NCBI GenBank assembly: GCA_013239625.1
Contig: MU055458.1
Coordinates: forward strand, 728,972 to 792,971
Source of the DNA: Lama guanicoe
Lineage: Eukaryota
Direction: 5' to 3'
DNA: 64,000 nucleotides
The notes beneath the pieces are model-generated. The model saw only the letters and a program-made list of their open reading frames with translations, was not told where the DNA came from and ran no database searches. Position numbers and translations under genes: made by a program. Below, one piece after another: positions 1,369 through 45,367 of this stretch (position 1 is the first letter of the stretch; every line of letters begins with the position of its first letter).

Positions 1369-1443
1369 CTGTCTCTGGGCGGCGGCCCCGAGGTGGACCT
1401 GACAAAACTTCACGGCCTGCTCCAGCGCAGCCTCCTCATCCAC
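1369..1443 (-). CDS. CABIN1: CABIN1 exon (~33), 75 nt, [25 protein letters not shown]
   Basis: Acceptor ccttgcttag|GTG, donor CAG|gtaaac, phase 0-0. Confidence 0.95.
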
Positions 1444-2587: not shown

Positions 2588-3262
2588 CTGCCTGATGAGC
2601 ATGTAGGTCTCGGCCATGATCCTCTCGATGCGGCCCAGGTCGTAGGCCATACCCTTCTGGCCCTGCTGCCACACGCGGTAGGCGTCCAGCAGGAGCATCT
2701 TGCCGGACTCTGTGTCTTCCAGGAGCTTCCTCTTGCGGCTGGGCCGGGGGGCTGCCTCCTCAGGCTGGCTGCTCACCCTGGTTCCAGGGGCAGTGGTGGG
2801 GGAGGCAGCAATGGCTGGAGGGGCCAGGGTGGGCGGGCCAGGCTGCTGGCGGGCGCTGATGCTCAGCTCCTCCAGGGACAGCTCAGTGGGCCGGCTATCG
2901 GGGCCCCGATCCCTCGGGGTGCGGCCTGGCTGCAGGGGTGGCGCCTGCTCCAAGTCCAGGCAGTGGGTGGCGGCCTCCCCCGTGTCCATGGGCTCGGCGG
3001 GCCCTGCCCGAGGACTCTCCTTGTCCCTCCGCTCCCCGCCCTGGTCGGCGCCGTCTCCCGCATCCACAGTTGCAGGCCGGTGGTTGAGGGGACCCTCTTT
3101 GCCCCCTGACTCGGCCCCAGGCCCTGAGCCATCAGCCAGAGGGGGCTTCTTGGGGTGGGGGAGGCCATCCTGGCCATCCTCAGGGCTGGCCTTGTGGGGG
3201 ACGTCGGTGGTCATCTTGGCTCCAGGGAGGCCACAGGCCTTGGGCCCTGGGCGTTCTGACCC
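2588..3262 (-). CDS. CABIN1: CABIN1 exon (~32), 675 nt, [14 protein letters not shown]...[11 protein letters not shown]; low-complexity region with a basic RKRK (NLS-like) motif
   Basis: Acceptor ttcttcacag|GGG, donor CAG|gtgggt, phase 0-0; core of ORF 2351..3355(-). Confidence 0.95.
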
Positions 3263-4048: not shown

Positions 4049-4145
4049 CTCTGCAAGCTCACTCAGTGTGTCCTCCAGCACCTTCACAGTGAGGATGAAG
4101 GCCCGCTGCGCCAGGACCTGACGGTCAGCATCTCGCAGATACTTC
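4049..4145 (-). CDS. CABIN1: CABIN1 exon (~31), 97 nt, (K)[32 protein letters not shown]
   Basis: Acceptor gcttgcag|G, donor GAG|gtgtgt, phase 2-0. Confidence 0.95.
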
Positions 4146-4771: not shown

Positions 4772-4975
4772 NNNNNNNNNNNNNNNNNNNNNNNNNNNNN
4801 NNNNNNNNNNNNNNNNNNNNNNNNNNNNNNNNNNNNNNNNNNNNNNNNNNNNNNNNNNNNNNNNNNNNNNNNNNNNNNNNNNNNNNNNNNNNNNNNNNNN
4901 NNNNNNNNNNNNNNNNNNNNNNNNNNNNNNNNNNNNNNNNNNNNNNNNNNNNNNNNNNNNNNNNNNNNNNNNNNN
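4772..4975. other. Assembly gap (204 N), inferred to hide CABIN1 exon ~30 (about 164 nt, GIWRIPVDEI...QRTPDQG)
   Basis: Phase 0 (35216) to phase 2 (4145) needs missing coding sequence. The minus strand entering the gap reads gtgaccctcctctt (branch-like motif plus pyrimidine tract). Confidence 0.7.
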
Positions 4976-8817: not shown

Positions 8818-8848
8818 NNNNNNNNNNNNNNNNNNNNNNNNNNNNNNN
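8818..8848. other. Assembly gap (31 N), intronic
   Basis: Run of N following a C-rich tract. Confidence 0.95.
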
Positions 8849-11349
8849 TCCACTCTGCTGTGACTGGGGCCACCCGCAGGGCTCAAACAGAAGCTAGGAG
8901 GAAGCAAGCACACCTGGGAACATCCAGAAAGGCCACGAAGGAGCTGGGCCTGGTGCCTTGGGAAGGAGGTGAGGCGGGAAAGGCGGTAAGGCCCCCAGCA
9001 CATGGAGGAGAGAAGGGAGGAGCAGGCGGCTGGGCAGATGATCCAGAGGGGCCTTCCCAGGACCAGCCCAGCTTGATCAGGGGCTGCCCCGGGGTGGTAT
9101 CAAGGGCTGACGTGCCTCTCAGGTCAGCAGCCAGGAGGAGCCGTGGGCTCTTGCTTACTGGCCCTTCCAGCCCCTGAACAGAGCTAGCCTCGAGGGGAGG
9201 TGGAAGGGCCGTGACCTGTGAGATGAGAAAGTCCCAGGGAGCTCCTGGAGCCCTCAGGGGGAAAGAAAGCACACCCACAAGAGAGTCAGGCCCAGCAGAA
9301 AGAGGCATGGGCCCACCAGGCGAGCCTGCAGGCCCTCCAGAAAAGGAATGTTCCAGGTCAAGGCCACAAACCCTGGCCTCCAAGTCCCCTTGACCTCTGT
9401 GCAGCTCTCAGGCAGCTCTGAGTGAGTTCCCAGCACTGCATCTGGGCCAAAGCCTGGACAGGCTCTGGGGTCCGTGCCTTAGACGTAGTCCCTGCAGGTC
9501 CAGGGGAGGCCCAACTCAGGAGCTGCTCCAGAGTGGCCTCTAGGTCACCCAGGGAGGTCAGCAGGGCAGTTTCTCAAGATAGCCAAGTGCATCCTGGGGT
9601 CCAGAGGATCATGTAGATGGGCCAGGCACACTCCCAGAGGGGTTTGTGCTAGTGGGGAAGGCAGACACAGGTGACCTCCAACCAGGGCGAGGGGCAGGGG
9701 AGAGGCTGGCAGGAGGAGGAAGGGGCTGAGAGAGTGAAGATTTGGGGCAGTGGGGTGTTCAGGGAAAGCCAGAGAGGGAGCCAAGAAGGAGCAGGAGCTG
9801 GAGGAAGAGGAAGGGGAGCCTCTGCCAAGGGAATGGGCAGCCCCAAGGGCCAGCCTCATCACCCAAGTGTCCTGAACAGATAGCACAAAGCAGCATGAAC
9901 TTTAATCTTACTTTTTAAATCAGTAACAGAGCACACATACTTTTTCACAACTTCAGAGACTCCCCCACCCCCATAGGAGTACCTGACTTATCCAGTTTCC
10001 TTTGGATGAGTTTCTGGGTCTGAGTCTTTGGGAATGTTGGGAAGAATGCTGGCTGAACAGCCTTCCCCACAGAGCTTTTCTCCCTCTCCCCAGGACGGAC
10101 CCCTCTACACTGAGGGAAACAGAGGGTGGGCTCGCAGCAGCAGGCACTATCCTGGAGGCCAGGCCTGGGCGCCGGACCTCAGATGATGAAGAATGCTCTG
10201 TTTTCCCAGCTCTCCCAGCCCCTGCCGGTCCCACATCCACAGGTGACAGGTGAGCAGGGCTTCCCAACATCCCTGTTCACAGAGAACACCACGCCTTGAG
10301 CACCCGAGGGACAGCCCGCATCCCCAGCAGAGGGATTCCTGCAGCACCCCCGGCACGGGTGCAGTAGTGACTCAGCGCTCCAAGCTCGAGGGCGGGAGAG
10401 CCTGCTGGCATCCTACGCCCAGGAGCAGCGGGCTTGGGGCCAGAGAGGAGGCAAGCAGAGGGCCAGCTGTTGCAAGGGTGGCTGGAGCTGGGGAGTGCGA
10501 GGGAGCTCCTCAGCAGGGAGGGAGGTTGGGGCAGGAGATTAAGGGCATTTTCCCCAGAGAAGCATAAAACCTTTCAGTTTCCAGGACAGCCTCAGTGTTG
10601 CAGCCCAATCCCAGGCTGAGCAAGGAATAGGTCAGTATCTGGACTTTTAAGGCCCTGAGGTCAGGAGCAGCCTTGGGAGAATACCAGCGCCCTCCACAGT
10701 TTTGGGGAGACACCTGTCATCTGTAAACCCATGCAAACTTCCTAAGCAGCAAGACCACTTGGAGACGGGCAGGGGGATGTGTGGGGCTGCACTTATGGTG
10801 CCTGAGTCCCCGGGACCAAGGATGCTCACAGGGTGCCCTCTCAGCTTCTCCAACACATGACCCCATGACACCTCCAAAAGAGACTAGTTCCAGGGCACAC
10901 AGCCAGCAGGAGGCTGAGATGACAGCAGAACTCAGCCTACCTCGCTCTTTCTGCTCCACCCCACCTGCCCCCAAGTAAGGGGAGCATCTCAGACAGAGCC
11001 AGGCCAGCAGGGAATCACCTCTCCCACTGCTGGCCCAGACGGCTAGGTCTCCTCCAGGAACTGCCCTGGTAGAGCCCCGAGTCCTTTGGGGCCAGGCCTG
11101 AGTTTCCAGGTGGCCAGCTTCCCATCTTCCTGGTGCCCTGCAGAGTTGACGGCCTTGCCCTCCCACAGCAATAGGAACCACCATCCTGCTCCAGGTCTTA
11201 GGTTAAGGGTGCACCAAGGGCGGGATCGGGTGAACACCCTGGGGGCAGGAAGTCCTGTAGCTTCCCCTGTAAACCCTGTGCCTCTCTGGTGGCAGGGTTG
11301 TACAGAGGCCACCAGGGGCGCCCTTGCCTTCCCCCCACCAGCTTAGGTC

Positions 11350-12630
11350 CAAGCTGGGCTGCGGAGGGCAAGGGATTCCCGCGCCATCCACAGGTAATGA
11401 GTCCCCAGCGCAGGAAGGGGCCGGGGAAGCCTGCAATTTGCCTGCCTCTGGCGCCCGCCCGCCCGTTTTCCAGCCTCTTCTGCCAAATGAGAAGTCGCAC
11501 ATGGGGTCCTCAGAACTGCCAGGCTGTCCGTCCCCTCCCCCTCCAGGGAAAAGCAGAAAGGACGAACAACTAAGTGTGTAGAGGCAGCCCACCCGACAAC
11601 GCCGCCGCGGCCCCGCCCGCGCCGAGCCTCTCTGTCCCGTCCCTATCACTCTGCGGTGGGGCAAAGTGCTGGCCCAGCTCAGGGCTCCGAGCAGGCCCCG
11701 CGCTCACAAAGCCCGGGCACCATCTTCCCGCCCCCGCACAGCAGCTATTTATAGCTGGGGAAGCACCGCGCGGGGCGCCGCTGCCCACCCCCGGCCCGCT
11801 CACCATCCCCGGGAGCGGCCGGTGTAGCTCCGGGTCGGGTCCGCGCCGCCCGCCGCGAAGTTGCTGGGTCGGCGCGGTGAGCGGCTTTCGCTTTCGCGCG
11901 GCCGGCGCAGCGCACACCCCCGCGCGCCCACTTGCGGCCCCGGCTGGGTCGGCTGGGCTCACCCGGGGCTCGCTGGCTGGCTTGTCCCCCGGGCCGCCGC
12001 CCACCCCCTTACGTCGCCCCGGCCCGCCCGCCGCCCACCTGGCGCTGTGCGGGGCGCCGGCCGTGGGCAGGGGGCGCCTCGGCCCCGCCGCCAGCGACTT
12101 CCTCCGCAGCGGCGCCCGGGAAACCGCGGCCCGCGGGCTTCCTGCTGCGCCAGGCGGGCCAGGAGTCGGGTGGGGGGCGTCCGCCCGAGGCGGCCCCGAG
12201 GACTGAGCCAAAGCTCCGGAGGGCGGAGAGCCGAGCAGGGAGAGGGAAGAGACGGTGGCGGCCCCGGGCAAGTTCCTACCCGCCGGCCCCGCCGTGGCAT
12301 CGGTGCAGCGGAGCTAGGGCGGGCGCCGGGCCATGGCGCGGAGGCTCGCTTGCTCGCGGCGGGCCGGGGCGGGGCGGCAGGGCCGGACGGGGCGCGGGCG
12401 CTCGCTCGCTGCTCGGCCTGGAAGCCGGCCCAGCGGCACAACTGACTTTGCCGGCCAATCCTCGCGGGTTCCGGGCCGGCGCGGCGGTGATACCGGGGGC
12501 ACAGCCCTCTCCGCGAGACTGTGGGACCGGGCATCCCAGACATAGCAGGTTAGGGGCGGCCGGGAGTGCGGAGGGACCAGCGATAAGAGGCCAGCGCCGC
12601 ACCAGGCTGGGCTGCCGTCCTCACCCTGCA
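11350..12630. promoter_or_regulatory. Intronic CpG island, candidate internal CABIN1 promoter
   Basis: Very high GC and CpG density against CpG-depleted flanks; GC box GGGGCGGGGC 12366-12375, CCAAT 12455-12459, E2F-type TTTCGCGC 11892-11899, MEF2/TATA-like CTATTTATAG 11745-11754. Confidence 0.85.
11745..11754. promoter_or_regulatory. MEF2 consensus site CTATTTATAG
   Basis: Exact CTA(A/T)4TAG; the only AT-rich block in the CpG island core. Confidence 0.65.
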
Positions 12631-15600
12631 CGGGGTACCTCTGTGAACGGTCCCCTGGAGTTGTGCCCTGAGGGCCCTGTGCCAGGCAGAGGTGTGGGTG
12701 CGGGGGGCACTCAGCCAAATAGAGCAGTCCTCACTGCTCCGGTGGGGCTGTGGGGGTTGGAGTGAAGAGGAGGGCAGGACACAGAGCCCAGTGTCCCCGA
12801 GTGGGCTTTCCAACTGGGAGGGGCCTTGTTTTACACTGGGCTGTGAGGCCCAGCAAGCAGAGGGCACTGGGCAGAGGAGTGGGAGCGGCAGGGCTGGGCA
12901 GAAGCCAGGTAGGCGCAGGATCCCCCCAGCCTCTGCATCTGGCAGGGGATGATGCCCATTCTAAGACAAGGATGCCCCCACAGTGCCTTCCTCTCTGGTT
13001 TGCTGTGGTGCAGATGGCCCTGGAATTGTCCACCTACTCCTAGAAGCTTCTGCCCCAGCTGAGAGGCCAAGCAAAGGCAGGGCAGGGCTGGATGGAGACA
13101 CGCTGCCCCCAGCCCTGGTCAGGCACCATGCCCCCACAGTCACTTCTCTCTCACACCTCAGCACCATGAGCGCCTGGCTCTGTCCTCCTTCCCAACACAC
13201 CCAGCAGCCTCAGAGCCACCTGGCCCCTATCCTGGTGACACCTGACCTAATGACATCTCCCCAAGCCAGGTGGTTTCCACCTTTCTACCCAGGTTCCTGC
13301 ACCAGCTTTCCCATACTTGCCACATGCCCCTACCCCTTCAGCCAGGGAGATGTCACACTCTCTGCCTGCCCTCCTTCCTGGGGACACCAGGGCAGTGTCT
13401 CACACTCCCTGGAGGACCACACCTGGATTCCCAGAGGTCATGCAGGGAGGCAGCCACCTCGAGGCGGTGCCCATTGAGGGCTAGGTCTTAGGCAAGGGGT
13501 TCTCAAGCCACATGTCCTTAAGTCACAATAGTCACCTACTGTCCATACTGAGTCATCATGACACCCACACGTGGAAACAGACTCAGAGTGACATGGCAGT
13601 AAGTCCAGTGTGGCCAAGACCACCCCCAGGCCTGGCCGGCTCTAGAGAGGGTAGGGACACTCCCCCACCGGCTGTCCCCAAGGCTGGAGCAGACCCAGGA
13701 CGCTTGTGCCCTGCACAGCTCACAGCCTCCCTTCATACCTCATCCTTTTCCTGTGAGGTCAAGTCAGACCCAGGGAGGCTGAGGACACATGCTCGTCACA
13801 CCTAGGCCAGGAAGAAATGATCTGTGTTGTGTGTGGATCCCCAGAAACCATATGGTGCGCACCAAGGCCTGGGGTGGGTGTGGGTGGCCCAGGGTGGGTG
13901 AGGGGAGCTCAGGGGTGAGGGGAGAGGTGCCCTGGGTGAACGCTGGCTCCTGGCACCACGAGATGCCCTGCACTTGAGCCGTTTGTGCTAGCCTCTCCAG
14001 AGTTGAGACAGGCACCATCTCCAGCCAACATGCCACCAAACAGGGAGGTGAAGACTCCTCCCTGAACCTCAGGGGTATGTGCTTCTTTGCACAAGAGCCA
14101 CCCCTTAGAGCTTCTAATCAACGCGCTGTGATGCGGGGGACTGGTGGGCCTGGAGAACTTCTGGGGCCTGAAAGAATCTTGTGCCCTATGCAGCACCCTA
14201 TGCAGGAGAGTCTGTGGGTTCTAGAAGCCCACAAAGCACTTGGTCATGCAGGACACAGGCCCCAGACTGCTACCTGGGAGAAACAGTCACTCAGCCACCT
14301 CAGGCTACCCCCGAGCACAGTGCCACCCATGGGGCCACCCCACGGCCAGCAGGAGCCCCATGAGCAGGGAGGTACTGGCTGTTCTGGGTTCATCCTGGGG
14401 GTGGGGGTGTCCCTGTCCACCTGCCTGGGCACTAAAGGGTGTGTTCCTGTTCCTGGAGTCACTCTTGTCACTGGCCAAGTCACAGCAAGTGCCGGGGGAC
14501 TGCCTGAGCCTGGACAGGCTCCCAGGAGGAGGATGGATATAGTGGTGGGTACTCAGCCTGGGGCGGAAGACGTGCCCAGCATCTAAGAAGCCCCTCACCC
14601 TCAGGGCAGGATGAATCTCCCACTATCAGGGTGCACCCTCTACCCCACTGCCTCTCCAAGGGACACGCAACCTTAAACCTCCCAGAGCAAACGTCAACAA
14701 TCCATCCTAAGAGGAAAACAAACTCAGGGCATCACCTAATCACCACGAGGGCTGCCCCTGTTCATCCTCTGCACCGCAGCCACTTCTGAGATGCACAGTG
14801 CCTGCTGCTCTAAGGATGACACACGTGCACCCTCCTGGTGGCTGCAGAGATGGAGCTGAGAGCTGGCCATCTGGGGGCCCAGGGACAGTTGCCGAAGCCA
14901 GATGCAGCCAGAGAAGGTGAGGCCAGACAGCCATGGCCTTGTCTGTGTGGGCACCCCTGGCAGGGGCAGTGGGGGTGAGGAGGAGGGGGCCGGAGGCTAA
15001 GTCCAGACTGTCTTGAGATATTGATGTCAAGTGAGGGGCAACAGAAGACTAACAGTGGCCTTGAGGAAGAGGCTCATATACGTTCATGAGGGGAAGGAAG
15101 ACTCCAAGGCCAAGAGGCACATGGTGGACCTGGGAGAGGAAGCCAGCCTGAAGGGCGAATGTGTGCAATACTCCAAGCCCACGCCCAGGGCGGCTAGCAG
15201 ACAGCTTGGGGCAGCTCACACTGGTTGGCAGCACAGCTCCCTGAGCAGCCACAGTCCTCCTTGGAAACATGCACCTGGCCTTTGGCTCACGTGCTGGTGA
15301 GGGTGAGCCTGCCACAGGCCCGCATCCCCAGCGAGGTGGGCTCCCAGTCCTGCAAAGCCAAGGCCCTGACCCAGAGGTGGCTGCTGCCCAAGGTGCTACC
15401 TGCTGAGCTGCTAGGGGGTGGGGTGGGGGAACCACGTGGCCCTCGCGGCCACCTCTTCTCAAGACCTGAGCCCACACAGACCTGCAGGTTGCTCCTGGTT
15501 CCTCCTGCCGGAAGTTACCCCAGCACCCTCCATCCCCATTCTAACCCCGGTCTTCCCCAGGCTGGGTCCAGTGCTGCCTTTCAGGCAGCAAGGACGCTTT

Positions 15601-21439: not shown

Positions 21440-21582
21440 CTAAAAATAGCACCAAGGCAGCAATTCCTACTACTAAGCAGCCAAGCCGAGGAGCTCGTGT
21501 TTCCCCAATTTAAACTTTTCCCTTCCTTCTTGCTCTCTAATTCCCACCGTCGCAACTGGGCTTCCTTTAACCTGACGTCAGG
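21440..21582. promoter_or_regulatory. Candidate enhancer: MEF2 site CTAAAAATAG (21440-21449) plus full CRE TGACGTCA (21573-21580)
   Basis: Both motifs are exact consensus matches; CpG is locally enriched over ~21480-21830. Confidence 0.55.
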
Positions 21583-22853
21583 GCAGTAACCCGCCACAGT
21601 CCCCTCCATCGAGGGCAAGGCCGGGAAGAGAGGCCCGGATGGGGCAGCCGTTGGTGACAACAAATCCCAGACAGCTTCTTCCCGGCGTCAGTCAACGTCG
21701 GTGCGTGGAGCTGAGCCTCTCTTGGGGAAATGGTGGGCTGAGGGGCCGTGGGCCTCTGGGGCATACTGGCGCCCCACTCGAGCACAGACGCAGGTCCGCA
21801 CGCGGGGCAGGCGCGTGGGACGGTGGGCCTGGTGTGCCAGAGCAGGGCTGAGCTGCAGGCCAGGCTCCCCAGCCCACCTCTGCCTGCGCCCACACATCCC
21901 CTGTCCTTCCAGCCCCGCCTGGATCCCAGCTCAGGCACCCACTTGCCGTGTGGCTGAGTCTCAGTTTCCTCACCTATAACGCAGCAAAGATGGTATCCAC
22001 AGAAGTCAAGAGCGGTGTGTGCAGCAGTGCCCGGAGGCACGGCAGGTCGGCTGGCCCCTCCCGCCCATCCTCCACCCCAGCCCCTCTGCCCTGTGAGAAA
22101 GCCTACATTCCAGGCAGGGCCCAGCGGTGTCCAGCACCTGCCTCTGTGTGCCCGCAGCCCCCACCGGCCCCCACAGGGCTCCTGCTGCCTCCTCTGCTCA
22201 GAAGCCCAGCCCTGCTCTGTGGTGTAGGCATCTCCCATGTCACCTCCTCCACCTTCTCAGCCTCCTACTCATGGGACCTCTGGTCACTCCTGTGGAGGGA
22301 GGTGGTTTATTCAGGCCTGGGGGTCTCAAAGAGCACGTGTGCAAAAGTGACTGCAACAGTGAGGCAGGCAGGCTGACACCTGCCAGAGGAGGCAGCCTGG
22401 GGCAGGGCTGGAGGGCCTAAAGAAGCCGGTGTGAGCTTGGGAAGGCTGGACTGTGCAGTGATGCTGTGCATGGAAGAGCCTGGGAGGGGACCCCAGAAGG
22501 GATGCCCAAGCAGTATGTTTTAAAAGGCTGAGGAAGGCACTGAGGGAGGCCGGAGCATGGAGGGACTTACCTGTGGCTTCAACAGACCTGCCTCGTCCCC
22601 ACGTCCCCACACTCCTTCCCCATCTACCCAGCTCCACCAGACCCACTGCAAGCTCAAACTCAGGCTGTGGCCGCCGCCCGCCCACACAGCCGGGGAAGCA
22701 GGCACAGTGCTGACTGGGCCTGTACTCCCTTCACGGTGGCTGGAAACTGGGTTGAAACAAGAAAAAAGCCCTGCCTGCTAAAATCAGTGAACATTTTGGG
22801 GAGGGAGGCAGGGCCACCTCTGGCTTGGTTACTGTGGGAACAATTAAAAAAAG

Positions 22854-27074: not shown

Positions 27075-27246
27075 NNNNNNNNNNNNNNNNNNNNNNNNNN
27101 NNNNNNNNNNNNNNNNNNNNNNNNNNNNNNNNNNNNNNNNNNNNNNNNNNNNNNNNNNNNNNNNNNNNNNNNNNNNNNNNNNNNNNNNNNNNNNNNNNNN
27201 NNNNNNNNNNNNNNNNNNNNNNNNNNNNNNNNNNNNNNNNNNNNNN
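27075..27246. other. Assembly gap (172 N), inferred to hide CABIN1 exon ~29 (about 114 nt, NLQWARDVLL...KTNFFN)
   Basis: This peptide is not encoded in any readable ORF; the gap size fits; flanks are CpG-rich and the minus strand is pyrimidine-rich entering the gap. Confidence 0.6.
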
Positions 27247-35215: not shown

Positions 35216-35547
35216 CCGGTGGGTCTTGCTGTGGGTGTAGAGGAACGCCAGCCGGTAGAGGCTCTTGTAGTGCTGGGGGAAGCGGCTGAGGCACAGGCGG
35301 AAGGAGGCGATGCACTGCTCTGTCAGGAACTGGCGCTGCTCCTCGGCACCTGCCGGCAGCCCCTGGGGGAAGGGCGCCGGCTCCCCAAGGGGCTCTGCTC
35401 TCTTCCTCCCATCCCATGGGGAGGGTGCAGACGCTGGGGGCTTGGCGGGGACCCCAGCGGAGGCTGGAGGGTCTGCAGTGGGCTTCTGGCTGCCCTGCTC
35501 TGTGGCCTGGAAGCCCTCCGTGCTCTCCAAGGACTCCTCGGCTTTCC
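35216..35547 (-). CDS. CABIN1: CABIN1 exon (~28), 332 nt, (G)[12 protein letters not shown]...[16 protein letters not shown]
   Basis: Acceptor ctcagctctag|GG (alternative CAG 6 nt upstream), donor CGG|gtgagg, phase 1-0. Confidence 0.93.
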
Positions 35548-43295: not shown

Positions 43296-45131
43296 CATTG
43301 CCAAGCAAGTGAGGGGAAGGACTGGGACTGGCACTCAGATCCCTGACTCCAGGGCCTGCTCTGCCGGGCCTCCCTGTCCAACCTCAAGTGGGGCCCCAAA
43401 CCCCACCCCCACCTGCTCCTCTTCGCCTGCAGCAAGGCGAGGCACACCCAGCATCCTGACCGCAGAAGGGCTCCCCTCTGGTGCGCATCCTCGCACAACA
43501 GGAGAGCCGAGGCTGGTCTCAGGCTGGGGAGTTGACTGGGAAGCAGGAGGCCACAGGCTCTCGTCCTAATGCCTGGTCAGCCAACCCCAGCTGGGGCACA
43601 AGAGGCAGAAAGAGAGTTGGGTGGTGTGGCCCCTCGAGGCTCCAGCATGTCCCCCAACATCAGCAACCTGCTGCTTCTGCCGGGGGCCAGGGCCCTTCCT
43701 TGGAGCTGGAAAGGCTGCCCAAAGGCCACTGTCACGTTACAAGATTATAGCTAGCTTAGGGTCCCGAACATCTCCACATTGCGGACACTGCTTTCTCCCC
43801 AGGGTGAGGGGTGAGAGCTCCAAAGGCCTGCACAGCCAAGCTGGGTGAGGACACCGGCTGGGACCAGCAAAGGCAGGCCAAGCGATCTCGATGGCCCCAC
43901 ACCACCGACAAGAATCAATGCCAAAAAATTTTTACCACCATTCAAAAATACACAACCATGGAAATTATATTTCAGCATATTCACACGGCTTCCTCTACAA
44001 ACTTCCAGAACCGGACACACTCTGGTGGCACCCAGGACAGGTCCCACCAGCACCTGCCCCCAGCACCCTGCTTCCACAGCTCTGCGCACACACGGGTGCC
44101 CGGGCGGGATGCTGGCAGTGGTGTGGGGCGGCGGCACGGCCCTCCCCCAAACCCAGGAGGCTCAGGGACACCCTGAGAGGAGAGCCTCTCTCCCCACACC
44201 TGCCTGCACTAAAGCCTCACAGGAAGGAAGAATCCTGCAGGAAGAACTCCCAGAGCAAGGACTTGTCTCCAGCATGCTTTTCAGTGTTCTCAGGAGTAAA
44301 TGGTTGGGGAGTCCTTGAACCTGAGGTGAGTAGGAGGGAAGGATCAGGACCAGGACCACAGTGCAGGCAGCAGGTGGGCCAGTGCCCCGGCCAGGCACAA
44401 CCCCTGTGGCCCATGCTCAGACTGGTCTCTGCGCACACACCATCCCGAACCCAGAGGAGACATCACCAGCGTCCTCTGCTCTCAGATCACAAACTGCACC
44501 CCGGGAAGTGAGGCCCTGCCTCCCTGTCGCCCTACAGCAGTCCTGCCCTGGCCCTGTGCTCACAGCCTGTCTCCTGGGCGCGCGCACGCAGCCTGATGAG
44601 CTGAGTGACACAGGGCTAAGGGCCCAGATGGCCTTCAGCACTGTCACTCCCCCAGGGCTCCACGCTGCGGCCCTCCAGGCCCACCAGTCTGGTTCATCGT
44701 TTTAACAGTGAGGAGAATGTGAAGACGGAGCTGTGAGGCCAGCATGCAAGCCTCCCGGTGTTAGTCAGGGATATGGTGGACGGGCCGCCATCTGCCCATC
44801 CCGCGTGGGAAGCCAGCTGACCCCCACCACCAACCCGCCCGGATTCCCTCGACCCTCCCCGACCGTCAGAAGGACGTGCTATTCCTGCGGACACCAACAG
44901 CCTTTCAACTGCCCTTAACGTCCCCATTTTGCAGGTGGGGAAATGCAGATCGGAGGGCTCCCAGGCGGGCGGTGGCAGGCGGCGACCCCGAGCATGTCTG
45001 GGAAGCACAGGATCACGAGGGTCCATGAGGTTAATGAGCAGCCGCAACATTGCCCGTGTCACCCCAGACCCAGCACCCCCCTCACCAAAACAAAGCGACT
45101 CATTGCCCAAAGCGCCCTCCCCCGAGACTGG

Positions 45132-45367
45132 NNNNNNNNNNNNNNNNNNNNNNNNNNNNNNNNNNNNNNNNNNNNNNNNNNNNNNNNNNNNNNNNNNNNN
45201 NNNNNNNNNNNNNNNNNNNNNNNNNNNNNNNNNNNNNNNNNNNNNNNNNNNNNNNNNNNNNNNNNNNNNNNNNNNNNNNNNNNNNNNNNNNNNNNNNNNN
45301 NNNNNNNNNNNNNNNNNNNNNNNNNNNNNNNNNNNNNNNNNNNNNNNNNNNNNNNNNNNNNNNNNNN
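45132..45367. other. Assembly gap (236 N), inferred to hide CABIN1 exon ~26 (about 179 nt, EKACLVDEDS...QQATPD)
   Basis: Neighbouring exons end in phase 2 and start in phase 1, so an exon is missing. The minus strand entering the gap reads ctgacctgcacccca|N, a branch-like motif plus an acceptor lacking only its final G. Confidence 0.75.

What the first reader, a model, noticed from the sequence alone, without database searches (positions are those of the whole stretch)
11798..12630. Candidate internal promoter and ATG-only first exon giving a short C-terminal Cabin1
Seen: inside the intronic CpG island the minus strand reads ...cccggggATG|GTGAGCggg (ATG 11804-11806, donor GTGAGC 11798-11803), with G at -3 and a phase-0 donor straight after the Met. 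Promoter motifs (E2F-type, GC box, CCAAT) lie upstream on that strand. Known: the next CABIN1 exon (GIWRIPVDEI..., inferred in gap 4772-4975) starts in phase 0 with G, which would complete a strong Kozak context. Cabin1's calcineurin-docking PxIxIT-type motif and MEF2-binding segment are at the far C-terminus, while the TPR/HIRA-complex part is N-terminal. Inference: a roughly 640-aa isoform M-GIWR... would act as a calcineurin/MEF2 inhibitor uncoupled from the HIRA chaperone role. Short CABIN1 transcripts may already be annotated in other mammals, so novelty needs checking.
Basis: partly seen in the sequence, partly recalled or inferred. Interest (0 to 1): 0.85.

Follow-up and report, generated by a model that had tools for sequence, protein, structure and literature searches.

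The report
Internal promoter for short Cabin1 isoform
A CpG island inside a late intron of the CABIN1 gene is very probably a real internal promoter for a roughly 600-residue C-terminal Cabin1 protein, but databases already annotate this short form from fish to primates, so it is ordinary.

Summary
On the minus strand, ATG 11806-11804 is followed directly by GTGAGC 11803-11798, inside the window's only strong CpG island (11451-12650).

The motif alone is no more than chance (4 in the window, 3.4 expected). Three other lines support it:
- **Conservation.** ATG-GT is kept in orthologous island sequences of other mammals.
- **RNA.** In one RNA run of a ~97%-identical relative, depth is raised over 12308-11803. 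The assembly forks exactly at three donor sites: 12279, 12038 and 11803.
- **Annotation.** Short "calcineurin binding protein 1" proteins of 552-612 aa are annotated or assembled in more than 30 vertebrates. In most placental mammals they start MPRRSRR|GIWR, which here is ATG 12300 (MPRRGRR) with donor 12280|12279, 494 bases upstream.

So the promoter and the short isoform are real. The ATG-only exon end is an old, conserved alternative among three donors. The product is about 580-610 aa, not 640. The acceptor exon is masked, and no junction read from this species was obtained. The function (calcineurin/MEF2 inhibitor without the HIRA-binding part) is inferred. Already known from annotation; no dedicated paper was found.

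The parts
11451..12650 (.). CpG island; internal (alternative) promoter region of CABIN1
   Evidence: 1200 bp, GC 0.75, observed/expected 0.90, 151 CpG; the only strong island in 64 kb; raised RNA-contig depth over 11803-12308 in run X4.
12455..12459 (-). Inverted CCAAT box (ATTGG on the minus strand); NF-Y-type site upstream of the start codons
   Evidence: motif scan. Function is inferred only.
12367..12377 (-). Tandem GC boxes (CCGCCCCGCCC); Sp1-type
   Evidence: motif scan. Function is inferred only.
12314..12334 (-). Six-codon upstream ORF MARRPP-stop with a strong start context (gccATGg), ending 14 nt before ATG 12300
   Evidence: The ATG is kept in orthologous ORFs P0003/P0004 (read as RHGPAPA) and P0005 (MARRPP).
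12280..12300 (-). ATG plus six codons (MPRRGRR); the coding part of the first exon as annotated in most placental mammals (MPRRSRR)
   Evidence: One search gives the ATG and the phase-0 donor. MPRRSRR|GIWR in mink, dog, lion, donkey, two bat species, chimpanzee, bonobo, orangutan, musk deer and RNA-assembly ORF P0016, with variants in monkeys.
12274..12279 (-). Donor 1: CGG|GTAGGA (exon ends at 12280)
   Evidence: X4 contig 12279-14138 ends exactly on the intron's first G. Kept in P0003/4/5, read as ...AGRNLPG.
12033..12038 (-). Donor 2: CAG|GTGGGC (exon ends at 12039); out of frame with ATG 12300 (phase 1)
   Evidence: X4 contig 12038-12308 ends exactly on the intron's first G, and depth falls from 127.8 to 76.5.
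11804..11806 (-).
   Evidence: M-V (= ATG GTN) is kept in P0001/P0130/P0131 (the 97% relative), P0002 and P0004. M|GIWR proteins occur in other vertebrates.
11798..11803 (-). Donor 3: ATG|GTGAGC
   Evidence: X4 contig 11803-12067 ends exactly on the intron's first G, and depth falls from 76.5 to 27.
11745..11754 (-). CTATAAATAG (MEF2 consensus, also TATA-like), about 50 nt inside the intron after donor 3
Evidence: Kept in orthologous ORFs (SPAINS, or FPGYK-stop).
4772..4975 (-). Masked stretch that most probably holds the acceptor exon (GIWRIPVDEIDRPGSF...PDQGK; 164 nt if it starts in phase 0)
   Evidence: By elimination. The segment is absent from the unmasked DNA. A pyrimidine tract lies just before the gap. 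The next exon starts with 1 nt that completes a Lys codon. The letters were not looked up.
4049..4145 (-). CABIN1 exon (K)[31 protein letters not shown]
   Evidence: tblastn; CAG| and |GT edges.
2588..3262 (-). Large CABIN1 exon [11 protein letters not shown]...ETYMLIRQ (225 codons)
   Evidence: Best hits are named calcineurin binding protein 1 (E-values down to 3e-109).
1369..1443 (-). CABIN1 exon [25 protein letters not shown]. The remaining C-terminal exons (PxIxIT/PPTP and MEF2-binding) lie beyond coordinate 1.
27075..27246 (-). Masked stretch that most probably holds the canonical upstream exon (NLQWARD...CERNKTNFFN) of full-length CABIN1
   Evidence: By elimination. P0074 and P0132-P0137 give ...THSKTHR|NLQW...NFFN|GIWR. 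The NLQW...NFFN part is absent from the unmasked DNA.
35216..35547 (-). Canonical full-length CABIN1 exon (...[12 protein letters not shown]...[14 protein letters not shown])
   Evidence: tblastn (77% identity, E 9e-51); edges.

Best explanation
The island at 11451-12650 is a conserved alternative promoter inside a roughly 22-kb intron of CABIN1, which runs on the minus strand. Transcription runs towards lower coordinates.

The first exon has three alternative 5' splice sites, all joined to the same downstream exon, the one that begins GIWRIPVDEI (masked at 4772-4975):
1. **12280|12279.** With ATG 12300 this gives MPRRGRR-GIWR..., the form annotated in most placental mammals.
2. **12039|12038.** This is out of frame with ATG 12300 and is probably non-productive, or translated from a later Met.
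3. **11804|11803.** This is also the form annotated or assembled in fish, reptiles, birds and at least one mammal.

Either in-frame product is about 580-610 aa. In orthologues it keeps the PEITVTPPTP calcineurin-docking decamer and the MEF2-binding domain. It lacks the whole N-terminal TPR region that ties full-length Cabin1 to the HIRA/UBN1/ASF1a complex.

By inference it is therefore a free calcineurin/MEF2 inhibitor.

**Shown:** the motifs, the island, conservation, the raised RNA depth and forks in one run of a relative, and the orthologous short proteins.
**Inferred:** the acceptor exon, the transcription start site, which start codon is used, and the function.
For: - sequence, island, start codons, donors and promoter motifs.
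- **, run X4** (metatranscriptome; contigs ~97% identical to the window). Mean depths are 14.7 (12279-14138), 127.8 (12038-12308), 76.5 (11803-12067) and 27 (8876-11832).
  - Neighbouring contigs overlap by 30 nt (k-1 for k=31). Their low-coordinate ends fall exactly on the first intron G of three donor-like sites.
  - Only 11 such sites exist in 1301 nt, so roughly (11/1301)^3 = 6e-7 by chance.
  - A fork one base into the intron is expected if the partner exon begins G followed by a non-T base, as GGN (Gly) does.
  - The intron below the island has twice the depth of the intron above it. This fits extra minus-strand transcription starting in the island.
- orthologous unspliced ORFs keep M-V (= ATG GT) at the ATG-only site, and keep ...ATGCCACGG...CGG|GTAGGAAC.
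- more than 20 mammals carry UniRef 'calcineurin binding protein 1' entries of 552-612 aa with PF09047 that start MPRRSRR|GIWR or a close variant. The table also lists a human 590-aa NCBI entry and the cDNA-derived Q9NPU0 (589 aa). Those two were not read.
- M|GIWR in P0049 and P0127 (two separate RNA contigs, mammal-like), Notechis scutatus, Junco hyemalis (...ARASVM|GIWR with a GC-rich leader), Lates japonicus isoform X1, Eleginops, Nothobranchius, Astyanax (...TEFNM|GIWR), Oncorhynchus (MGIWH..., a variant) and several RNA-assembly ORFs.
- PF09047 is the only Pfam domain in the three short forms scanned (E-values 6e-22 to 9e-23).
- **PMC9166766:** residues 2146-2155 (PxIxIT plus PPTP) are the minimal calcineurin-binding peptide. 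The sequence PEITVTPPTP is present in the fetched short forms that reach the C-terminus.
Against: - No read or contig from the window's own species was laid. The RNA evidence is one run of a ~3% divergent relative, from contigs only, so there is no strand, no start and no visible junction partner.
- Run X1 shows one unbroken 5.6-kb contig of flat depth with no fork. The raw-read run X19 laid nothing.
- Genomic DNA or pre-mRNA accounts for the background depth.
- The acceptor exon is masked and is placed only by elimination.
- Many of the UniRef short models may be projections of one another, so they are not independent.
- A transcript that starts above 12334 and uses donor 3 carries a strong 6-codon upstream ORF and a 113-codon ORF from ATG 12300 before it reaches ATG 11806. 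Translation of M-GIWR from it would be inefficient unless starts lie below 12298.
- No protein-level evidence, and no paper on the short form, was found.
Confidence: 0.8

Rival explanations
1. The internal promoter and the short isoform are real, but only the MPRRGRR exon (ATG 12300, donor 12280) matters in this lineage. ATG|GTGAGC at 11806-11798 is then a chance or relic motif in the first intron, used at most as a cryptic minor splice site.
For:: the motif is at chance frequency in the window; nearly all placental models start MPRRSRR; two upstream ATGs precede ATG 11806 in a long leader.
Against: -: a fork falls exactly at 11803, with about two thirds of the depth leaving the genomic path there.
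- M-V is kept in every orthologue that covers the site and reads it in that frame, although the surrounding noncoding translation is only 58-62% identical.
- exons ending in ATG joined to GIWR occur from fish to a mammal-like assembly, so ATG|GT is the older form.
Confidence: 0.2
2. Transcripts from the island are mostly non-coding or decay targets (promoter-associated RNA with upstream ORFs and an out-of-frame donor 2), and little or no short Cabin1 protein is made.
For:: in X4 the largest depth step includes donor 2 (12039), which is out of frame with ATG 12300. The leader holds a strong upstream ORF. ATG 12300 has a weak context (C at -3, C at +4). No proteomic or literature support was found.
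Against: An in-frame Met at the exon end, and a phase-0 junction, are conserved over more than 400 million years of vertebrate evolution. That is hard to explain without a protein. The search table also lists a human cDNA-derived entry and many NCBI and Ensembl coding models.
Confidence: 0.15
3. The island is an orphan CpG island or enhancer with no promoter role. The RNA signal would then be genomic DNA or unspliced full-length CABIN1 pre-mRNA, and the database short forms would be gene-model fragments.
For:: X1 and X9 show only flat or scattered depth across the region, as DNA or pre-mRNA would. The tool itself warns that DNA can be present in RNA libraries.
Against: -: X4 shows a 5- to 9-fold local rise in depth, bounded by forks at splice donors.
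- the seven residues MPRR(S/G)RR of the database models are encoded in this island, next to a phase-0 GT.
- spliced RNA-assembly contigs (P0016, P0049, P0127) carry complete short ORFs with a Met directly before GIWR, whereas fragments of the canonical transcript read ...NFFN|GIWR.
Confidence: 0.04

Closest known systems
Annotated short 'calcineurin binding protein 1' proteins of placental mammals (e.g. UniRef A0A8C0T6R8 dog 584 aa, A0A9L0J622 donkey 586 aa, A0A8C6E1W1 musk deer 576 aa, A0A671FI12 horseshoe bat 592 aa). The search table also lists human Q9NPU0 / DKFZp762G2015 (589 aa), which was not read.
   Same: They share the downstream exons (GIWRIPVDEIDRPGSF..., KYLRDADRQ..., the large exon, VDEEAALEQ...). 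Their first seven residues MPRRSRR correspond to MPRRGRR, encoded at 12300-12280 in this island next to a phase-0 GT. PF09047 lies near the C-terminus.
   Different: The window has Gly where they have Ser at residue 5. The C-terminal third of the gene is outside the window.
M|GIWR short Cabin1 models and RNA assemblies of other vertebrates (Lates japonicus isoform X1 593 aa, Eleginops maclovinus 593 aa, Nothobranchius 594 aa, Notechis scutatus partial, Junco hyemalis 579 aa, RNA-assembly ORFs P0049/P0127/P0100/P0144-P0153)
   Different: These are other species. Homology between their first exons and 11806-11804 is therefore inferred from the junction, not from aligned DNA.
N-terminally truncated isoforms made from intronic promoters, such as dystrophin Dp71/Dp140/Dp260 (PMC7372313) and Delta133p53 (PMC6162399)
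   Same: An internal promoter in a late intron, a short unique first exon, and a product that keeps the C-terminal interaction modules while losing the N-terminal scaffold.
   Different: A different gene family. For Cabin1 no functional study of the short form was found in the library.
Experimental C-terminal Cabin1 fragments used as calcineurin inhibitors (PMC9166766)
   Same: The natural short form would contain the same PEITVTPPTP decamer that binds calcineurin.
   Different: Those are engineered fragments or peptides, not products of an endogenous promoter.

Membership tests
CABIN1 (calcineurin-binding protein 1) orthologue | Exons that match named CABIN1 proteins in order and on one strand | tested here: met
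   the large exon hits named calcineurin binding protein 1 entries (E down to 3e-109, 70-85% identity); collinear exons on the minus strand at 35547-35216, 4145-4049, 3262-2588 and 1443-1369, with AG/GT edges.
CABIN1 (calcineurin-binding protein 1) orthologue | C-terminal MEF2-binding domain (Pfam PF09047) and the PxIxIT+PPTP calcineurin-docking decamer | not testable with these tools
   These exons lie beyond coordinate 1 of the window: tblastn stops at ...AAQRQ, and Pfam finds nothing in the window exons. In orthologous short forms PF09047 is present, and PEITVTPPTP is present in those fetched that reach the C-terminus.
Alternative intronic CpG-island promoter giving an N-terminally truncated isoform | CpG island inside an intron of the full-length gene | tested here: met
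   One search gives the island. Searches place the canonical exons on both sides: 35547-35216 and probably 27075-27246 above it; 4772-4975 (probable) and 4145-4049 below it.
Alternative intronic CpG-island promoter giving an N-terminally truncated isoform | Transcription starting in the island, on the sense strand | tested here: inconclusive
   depth is raised over 11803-12308, and the downstream intron has twice the depth of the upstream one. This comes from one run of a 97% relative, from contigs only, which show neither strand nor start. Raw-read run X19 laid nothing.
Alternative intronic CpG-island promoter giving an N-terminally truncated isoform | Splice junction from the island exon to the downstream coding exon | tested here: inconclusive
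   forks fall exactly at the donors 12279, 12038 and 11803, as expected for splicing to an exon that starts GG. Orthologous spliced ORFs show both junctions.
Alternative intronic CpG-island promoter giving an N-terminally truncated isoform | In-frame start codon in the alternative first exon | tested here: met
   ATG 12300 plus 21 nt reaches donor 12280 in phase 0, and ATG 11806 is directly followed by donor 11803 in phase 0. Phase 0 of the acceptor follows from the constant G after four different upstream contexts.
Alternative intronic CpG-island promoter giving an N-terminally truncated isoform | Protein product detected | not tested
   No proteomic or ribosome-profiling data could be reached. 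PMC4419486 gives only a hint: rat Cabin1 read counts more than doubled when all RefSeq exons were counted rather than the longest transcript.

The most novel reading that the evidence does not exclude
The short Cabin1 would be a vertebrate-wide, separately regulated calcineurin/MEF2 brake. Its N-terminus and output would be set by the choice among three 5' splice sites and by a conserved 6-codon upstream ORF. The conserved MEF2 consensus site 50 nt inside its first intron would close a negative feedback loop, in which MEF2 induces its own inhibitor. Some published 'Cabin1' phenotypes in T cells, muscle and neurons would then belong to this isoform and not to the HIRA-complex subunit.
Probability: 0.15. 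Interest if true: 0.6.

Novelty: already known. Interest (0 to 1): 0.3.

Why it matters
Cabin1 is described in two unconnected ways: as a calcineurin/MEF2 inhibitor acting through its last ~100 residues, and as the TPR subunit of the HIRA histone H3.3 chaperone complex.

A conserved promoter that makes only the C-terminal quarter would separate these roles physically. Each could then be tested by an isoform-specific knock-out.

The isoform is already present in Ensembl, UniProt and NCBI models from fish to primates, so its existence is not new. What remains open is its expression pattern, which start codon is used, and its function. No paper in the searchable library addresses these.

Tried and rejected
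- **PDB and Pfam on window exons: nothing.** I had first assumed that the ...[14 protein letters not shown]... exon was the MEF2-binding segment. It is not. PF09047 lies further C-terminal, outside the window.
- **Bacterial promoter/terminator scan:** irrelevant here and empty.
- **Share of words in RNA runs.** I first read the constant ~0.5 share as a ~600-nt exon. One search showed it simply reflects ~3% divergence of a related species, so I rejected that reading.
- **Raw-read run X19:** nothing laid, so no test.
- **The look-up of encoding contigs was closed.** No orthologous DNA could be fetched. Conservation had to be read from ORF translations, where M-V proves ATG GT but not the full GTGAGC.
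- **First protein search.** It found only unspliced ORFs. Its length window (136-432 aa) could not have seen long spliced ORFs, so the blank means nothing.
- **Goat fragment P0030 (...ARSAPQ|GIWR).** I considered it a product of donor 2 and dropped the idea. A Q before GIWR is what intron read-through gives, and the match to the window is ambiguous.
- **A second start at the TATA-like site** (ATG 11723, donor 11708|11707): no fork and no depth step there.
- **RFX7 binding** (CABIN1 is listed as an RFX7 target in bioRxiv 10.1101/2024.09.24.614849): I saw no clear X-box in the island by eye and did not pursue it.
- **Masked stretches** were not filled.
- **Human entries.** The two entries labelled Homo sapiens (P0014, P0025) appear in the search tables. 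They were left out of every fetch and script.
Full report
**1. What is in the sequence**

On the minus strand the window reads ...ccgctcccggggATG|GTGAGCgggcc. The ATG is at 11806-11804 and GTGAGC at 11803-11798, with G at -3 and G at +4.

The site lies in the only strong CpG island of the 64-kb window: 11451-12650, GC 0.75, CpG observed/expected 0.90, 151 CpG.

- an inverted CCAAT at 12459-12455;
- tandem GC boxes at 12377-12367;
- E2F-like sites at 12123-12116, and at 11892-11899 on the + strand.

As a bare pattern, ATGGTRAG is no more frequent than chance: 4 in the window against 3.44 +/- 1.78 in shuffles. The pattern by itself is therefore not evidence.

**2. The gene around it**

The minus strand carries the 3' part of a CABIN1 orthologue. 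The large exon at 3262-2588 hits proteins named calcineurin binding protein 1, with E-values down to 3e-109.

tblastn with non-human orthologues, plus the AG/GT edges, place collinear exons at 35547-35216, 4145-4049, 3262-2588 and 1443-1369.

Two orthologous segments match nowhere in the unmasked DNA:
- NLQWARD...CERNKTNFFN, the canonical upstream exon;
- GIWRIPVDEIDRPGSF...PDQGK.

By order and size they fit the masked stretches 27075-27246 and 4772-4975. This is an inference by elimination; the masked letters were not looked up.

The island therefore sits in a roughly 22-kb intron of the full-length gene.

The last third of the coding sequence, including the calcineurin-docking and MEF2-binding parts, lies beyond coordinate 1. 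That is why Pfam and PDB searches of the window exons were empty.

**3. RNA evidence**

Seven runs on record as RNA, plus several only guessed to be RNA, hold 0.3-0.5 of the island's sampled words.

Laying four of them on 8849-14848 showed that their contigs come from a relative that differs by about 3%. That divergence explains the constant share of words.

- **X1:** one unbroken 5643-nt contig of flat depth (DNA or pre-mRNA).
- **X9:** scattered low-depth pieces.
- **X19 (raw reads):** nothing laid.
- **X4 (a metatranscriptome):** informative, as shown below.

| X4 contig | Mean depth |
|---|---|
| 12279-14138 | 14.7 |
| 12038-12308 | 127.8 |
| 11803-12067 | 76.5 |
| 8876-11832 | 27 |

Neighbouring contigs overlap by exactly 30 nt, which is k-1 for a 31-mer graph. 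The genomic path is therefore continuous, and each break is a fork.

All three low-coordinate ends (12279, 12038, 11803) fall on the first intron G of a donor-like site: CGG|GTAGGA, CAG|GTGGGC and ATG|GTGAGC. Only 11 such sites exist in 1301 nt, so the triple coincidence has a chance of roughly 6e-7.

A fork one base inside the intron is what splicing predicts when the partner exon starts with G followed by a non-T base, as GGN for Gly does.

Depth falls at each fork. The intron below the island is about twice as deep as the intron above it, which fits transcription that starts in the island and runs in the CABIN1 sense.

This is one run, one study, a related species, and contigs only. The junction partner, the strand and the start site are not seen.

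**4. Comparative evidence**

*Unspliced orthologues of the island.* A search with the frame-0 translation of the island found unspliced orthologous ORFs.
- P0001, P0130 and P0131 are the 97% relative. One of them comes from a 5643-nt contig, the same length as the X1 contig.
- P0002-P0005 are more distant mammals.
- P0002 shares its 15,344-nt longest-contig length with P0009. P0009's large exon is more similar to the window (85%) than the human entries are (71-72%).
- I therefore do not take P0002, or the P0003 and P0004 that resemble it, for human. P0005's origin is unknown.

The surrounding noncoding translation is only 58-62% identical in the distant ones. The stretch ATGCCACGG...CGG|GTAGGAAC is kept as well.

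*Short annotated proteins.* A search with the large exon returned many UniRef, NCBI and RNA-assembly proteins of 552-612 aa that carry PF09047. Their N-termini fall into these classes.

| N-terminus | Where found | Meaning in the window |
|---|---|---|
| MPRRSRR\|GIWR | mink, dog, lion, donkey, Rhinolophus, chimpanzee, bonobo, orangutan, musk deer, RNA-assembly ORF P0016 | ATG 12300-12298, MPRRGRR, phase-0 donor 12280\|12279 |
| MPRLSQR, MPRLSRR, MPRQSWR, MPRRSWR | Old World monkeys, marmoset, Pipistrellus | variants of the same start |
| ...CERNKTNFFN\|GIWR | fragments of the canonical transcript | full-length gene |
| ...Q\|GIWR | several models | intron read-through of an in-frame CAG acceptor |

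M|GIWR was found in:
- two separate mammal-like RNA contigs (P0049, P0127);
- Notechis scutatus;
- Junco hyemalis (...ARASVM|GIWR, after a GC-rich leader);
- Lates japonicus isoform X1, Eleginops and Nothobranchius;
- Astyanax (...TEFNM|GIWR) and Oncorhynchus (MGIWH..., a variant of the same start);
- several further RNA-assembly ORFs.

**5. Reading**

The island is an internal promoter of CABIN1 that is conserved across vertebrates. In this window its first exon has three alternative donors:

| Donor | Junction | Reading frame outcome |
|---|---|---|
| 1 | 12280\|12279 | with ATG 12300 gives MPRRGRR-GIWR... |
| 2 | 12039\|12038 | out of frame with ATG 12300 (262 nt, phase 1); probably non-productive or read from a later Met |
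| 3 | 11804\|11803 | ends in ATG and gives M-GIWR... |

The exon end in ATG is the phylogenetically older form. The seven-codon start is the one placed in most placental models.

Which form prevails here is unknown. In X4 the depth steps at donors 2 and 3 are about equal, and the use of donor 1 cannot be read from mean depths.

A leader that begins above 12334 also contains a strong six-codon upstream ORF (MARRPP-stop, 12334-12314). If donor 1 is skipped, it also contains a 113-codon ORF from ATG 12300 that ends at 11960. Both would hinder initiation at ATG 11806, unless starts also lie below 12298.

**6. Product and function**

Orthologous short forms are 552-612 aa, not about 640.
- PF09047 is the only Pfam domain in the three short forms scanned.
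- PEITVTPPTP is present in the fetched forms that reach the C-terminus.
- That decamer is the minimal calcineurin-binding peptide (residues 2146-2155 of the full-length protein; PMC9166766).
- The short forms lack everything N-terminal of GIWR. From general knowledge, not tested here, that includes the TPR region that binds HIRA.

That the short form acts as a calcineurin/MEF2 inhibitor uncoupled from the histone-chaperone role is therefore a reasonable inference, not a result.

**7. Novelty**

The short isoform is already in Ensembl/UniProt and NCBI models of many species, with both kinds of N-terminus. The search table also lists a human cDNA-derived entry (Q9NPU0, DKFZp762G2015), which I did not read.

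Four full-text searches found no paper about an internal CABIN1 promoter or a short isoform. The library does not cover subscription journals.

One rat ribosome-profiling paper remarks that counting all RefSeq exons more than doubled Cabin1 reads compared with the longest transcript (PMC4419486). This is a hint and no more.

**8. Limits and rules observed**

- Read laying and the look-up of sequencing runs were single-use.
- The masked stretches were left unread.
- Entries labelled Homo sapiens were excluded from fetches and scripts.

**Verdict**

It is already known from annotation, so interest is modest.

Noticed in passing
window 12314-12334 (-): A six-codon upstream ORF (MARRPP-stop) with a strong start context ends 14 nt before ATG 12300. 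Its ATG is kept in more distant mammalian orthologues (P0003/4/5). It may control which start codon of the short isoform is used.
   Followed up: partly
window 11745-11754 (-): CTATAAATAG, a perfect MEF2 consensus that is also TATA-like, lies 50 nt inside the intron after donor 11803. It is kept in the orthologous ORF translations (SPAINS, or FPGYK-stop). No start or fork is seen just downstream of it in run X4.
   Followed up: partly
window 12033-12039 (-): A third donor, CAG|GTGGGC, looks the best of the three by consensus and shows a clear fork and depth step in X4. It is out of frame with ATG 12300, so part of the island's transcripts may be non-productive.
   Followed up: partly
window 4772-4975, 27075-27246, 45132-45367: Two of the three long masked stretches coincide with where highly conserved CABIN1 exons are expected from orthologues. 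The third probably does too, but was not checked. The 31-base gap at 8818-8848 has no splice-site-like flanks.
   Followed up: partly
protein P0006 (Ursus maritimus), relative to the exon in 4772-4975: The polar-bear model lacks 17 residues (PGSFAWHMNRSIVLLLK) inside the GIWR exon and has a different N-terminus (MQPFGRGECRT). This is either an internal alternative splice or a model artefact.
   Followed up: no
window 21501-21850 and 44701-45050: Two weak CpG-rich patches (350 bp each, observed/expected about 0.66) lie in other CABIN1 introns.
   Followed up: no
proteins P0013, P0039, P0126 (start MTTDV...): Several models and RNA-assembly ORFs start at an internal Met in the large exon (window about 3205, -) and give 496-506 aa. 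This would be the first in-frame Met available to out-of-frame donor-2 transcripts after re-initiation.
   Followed up: no
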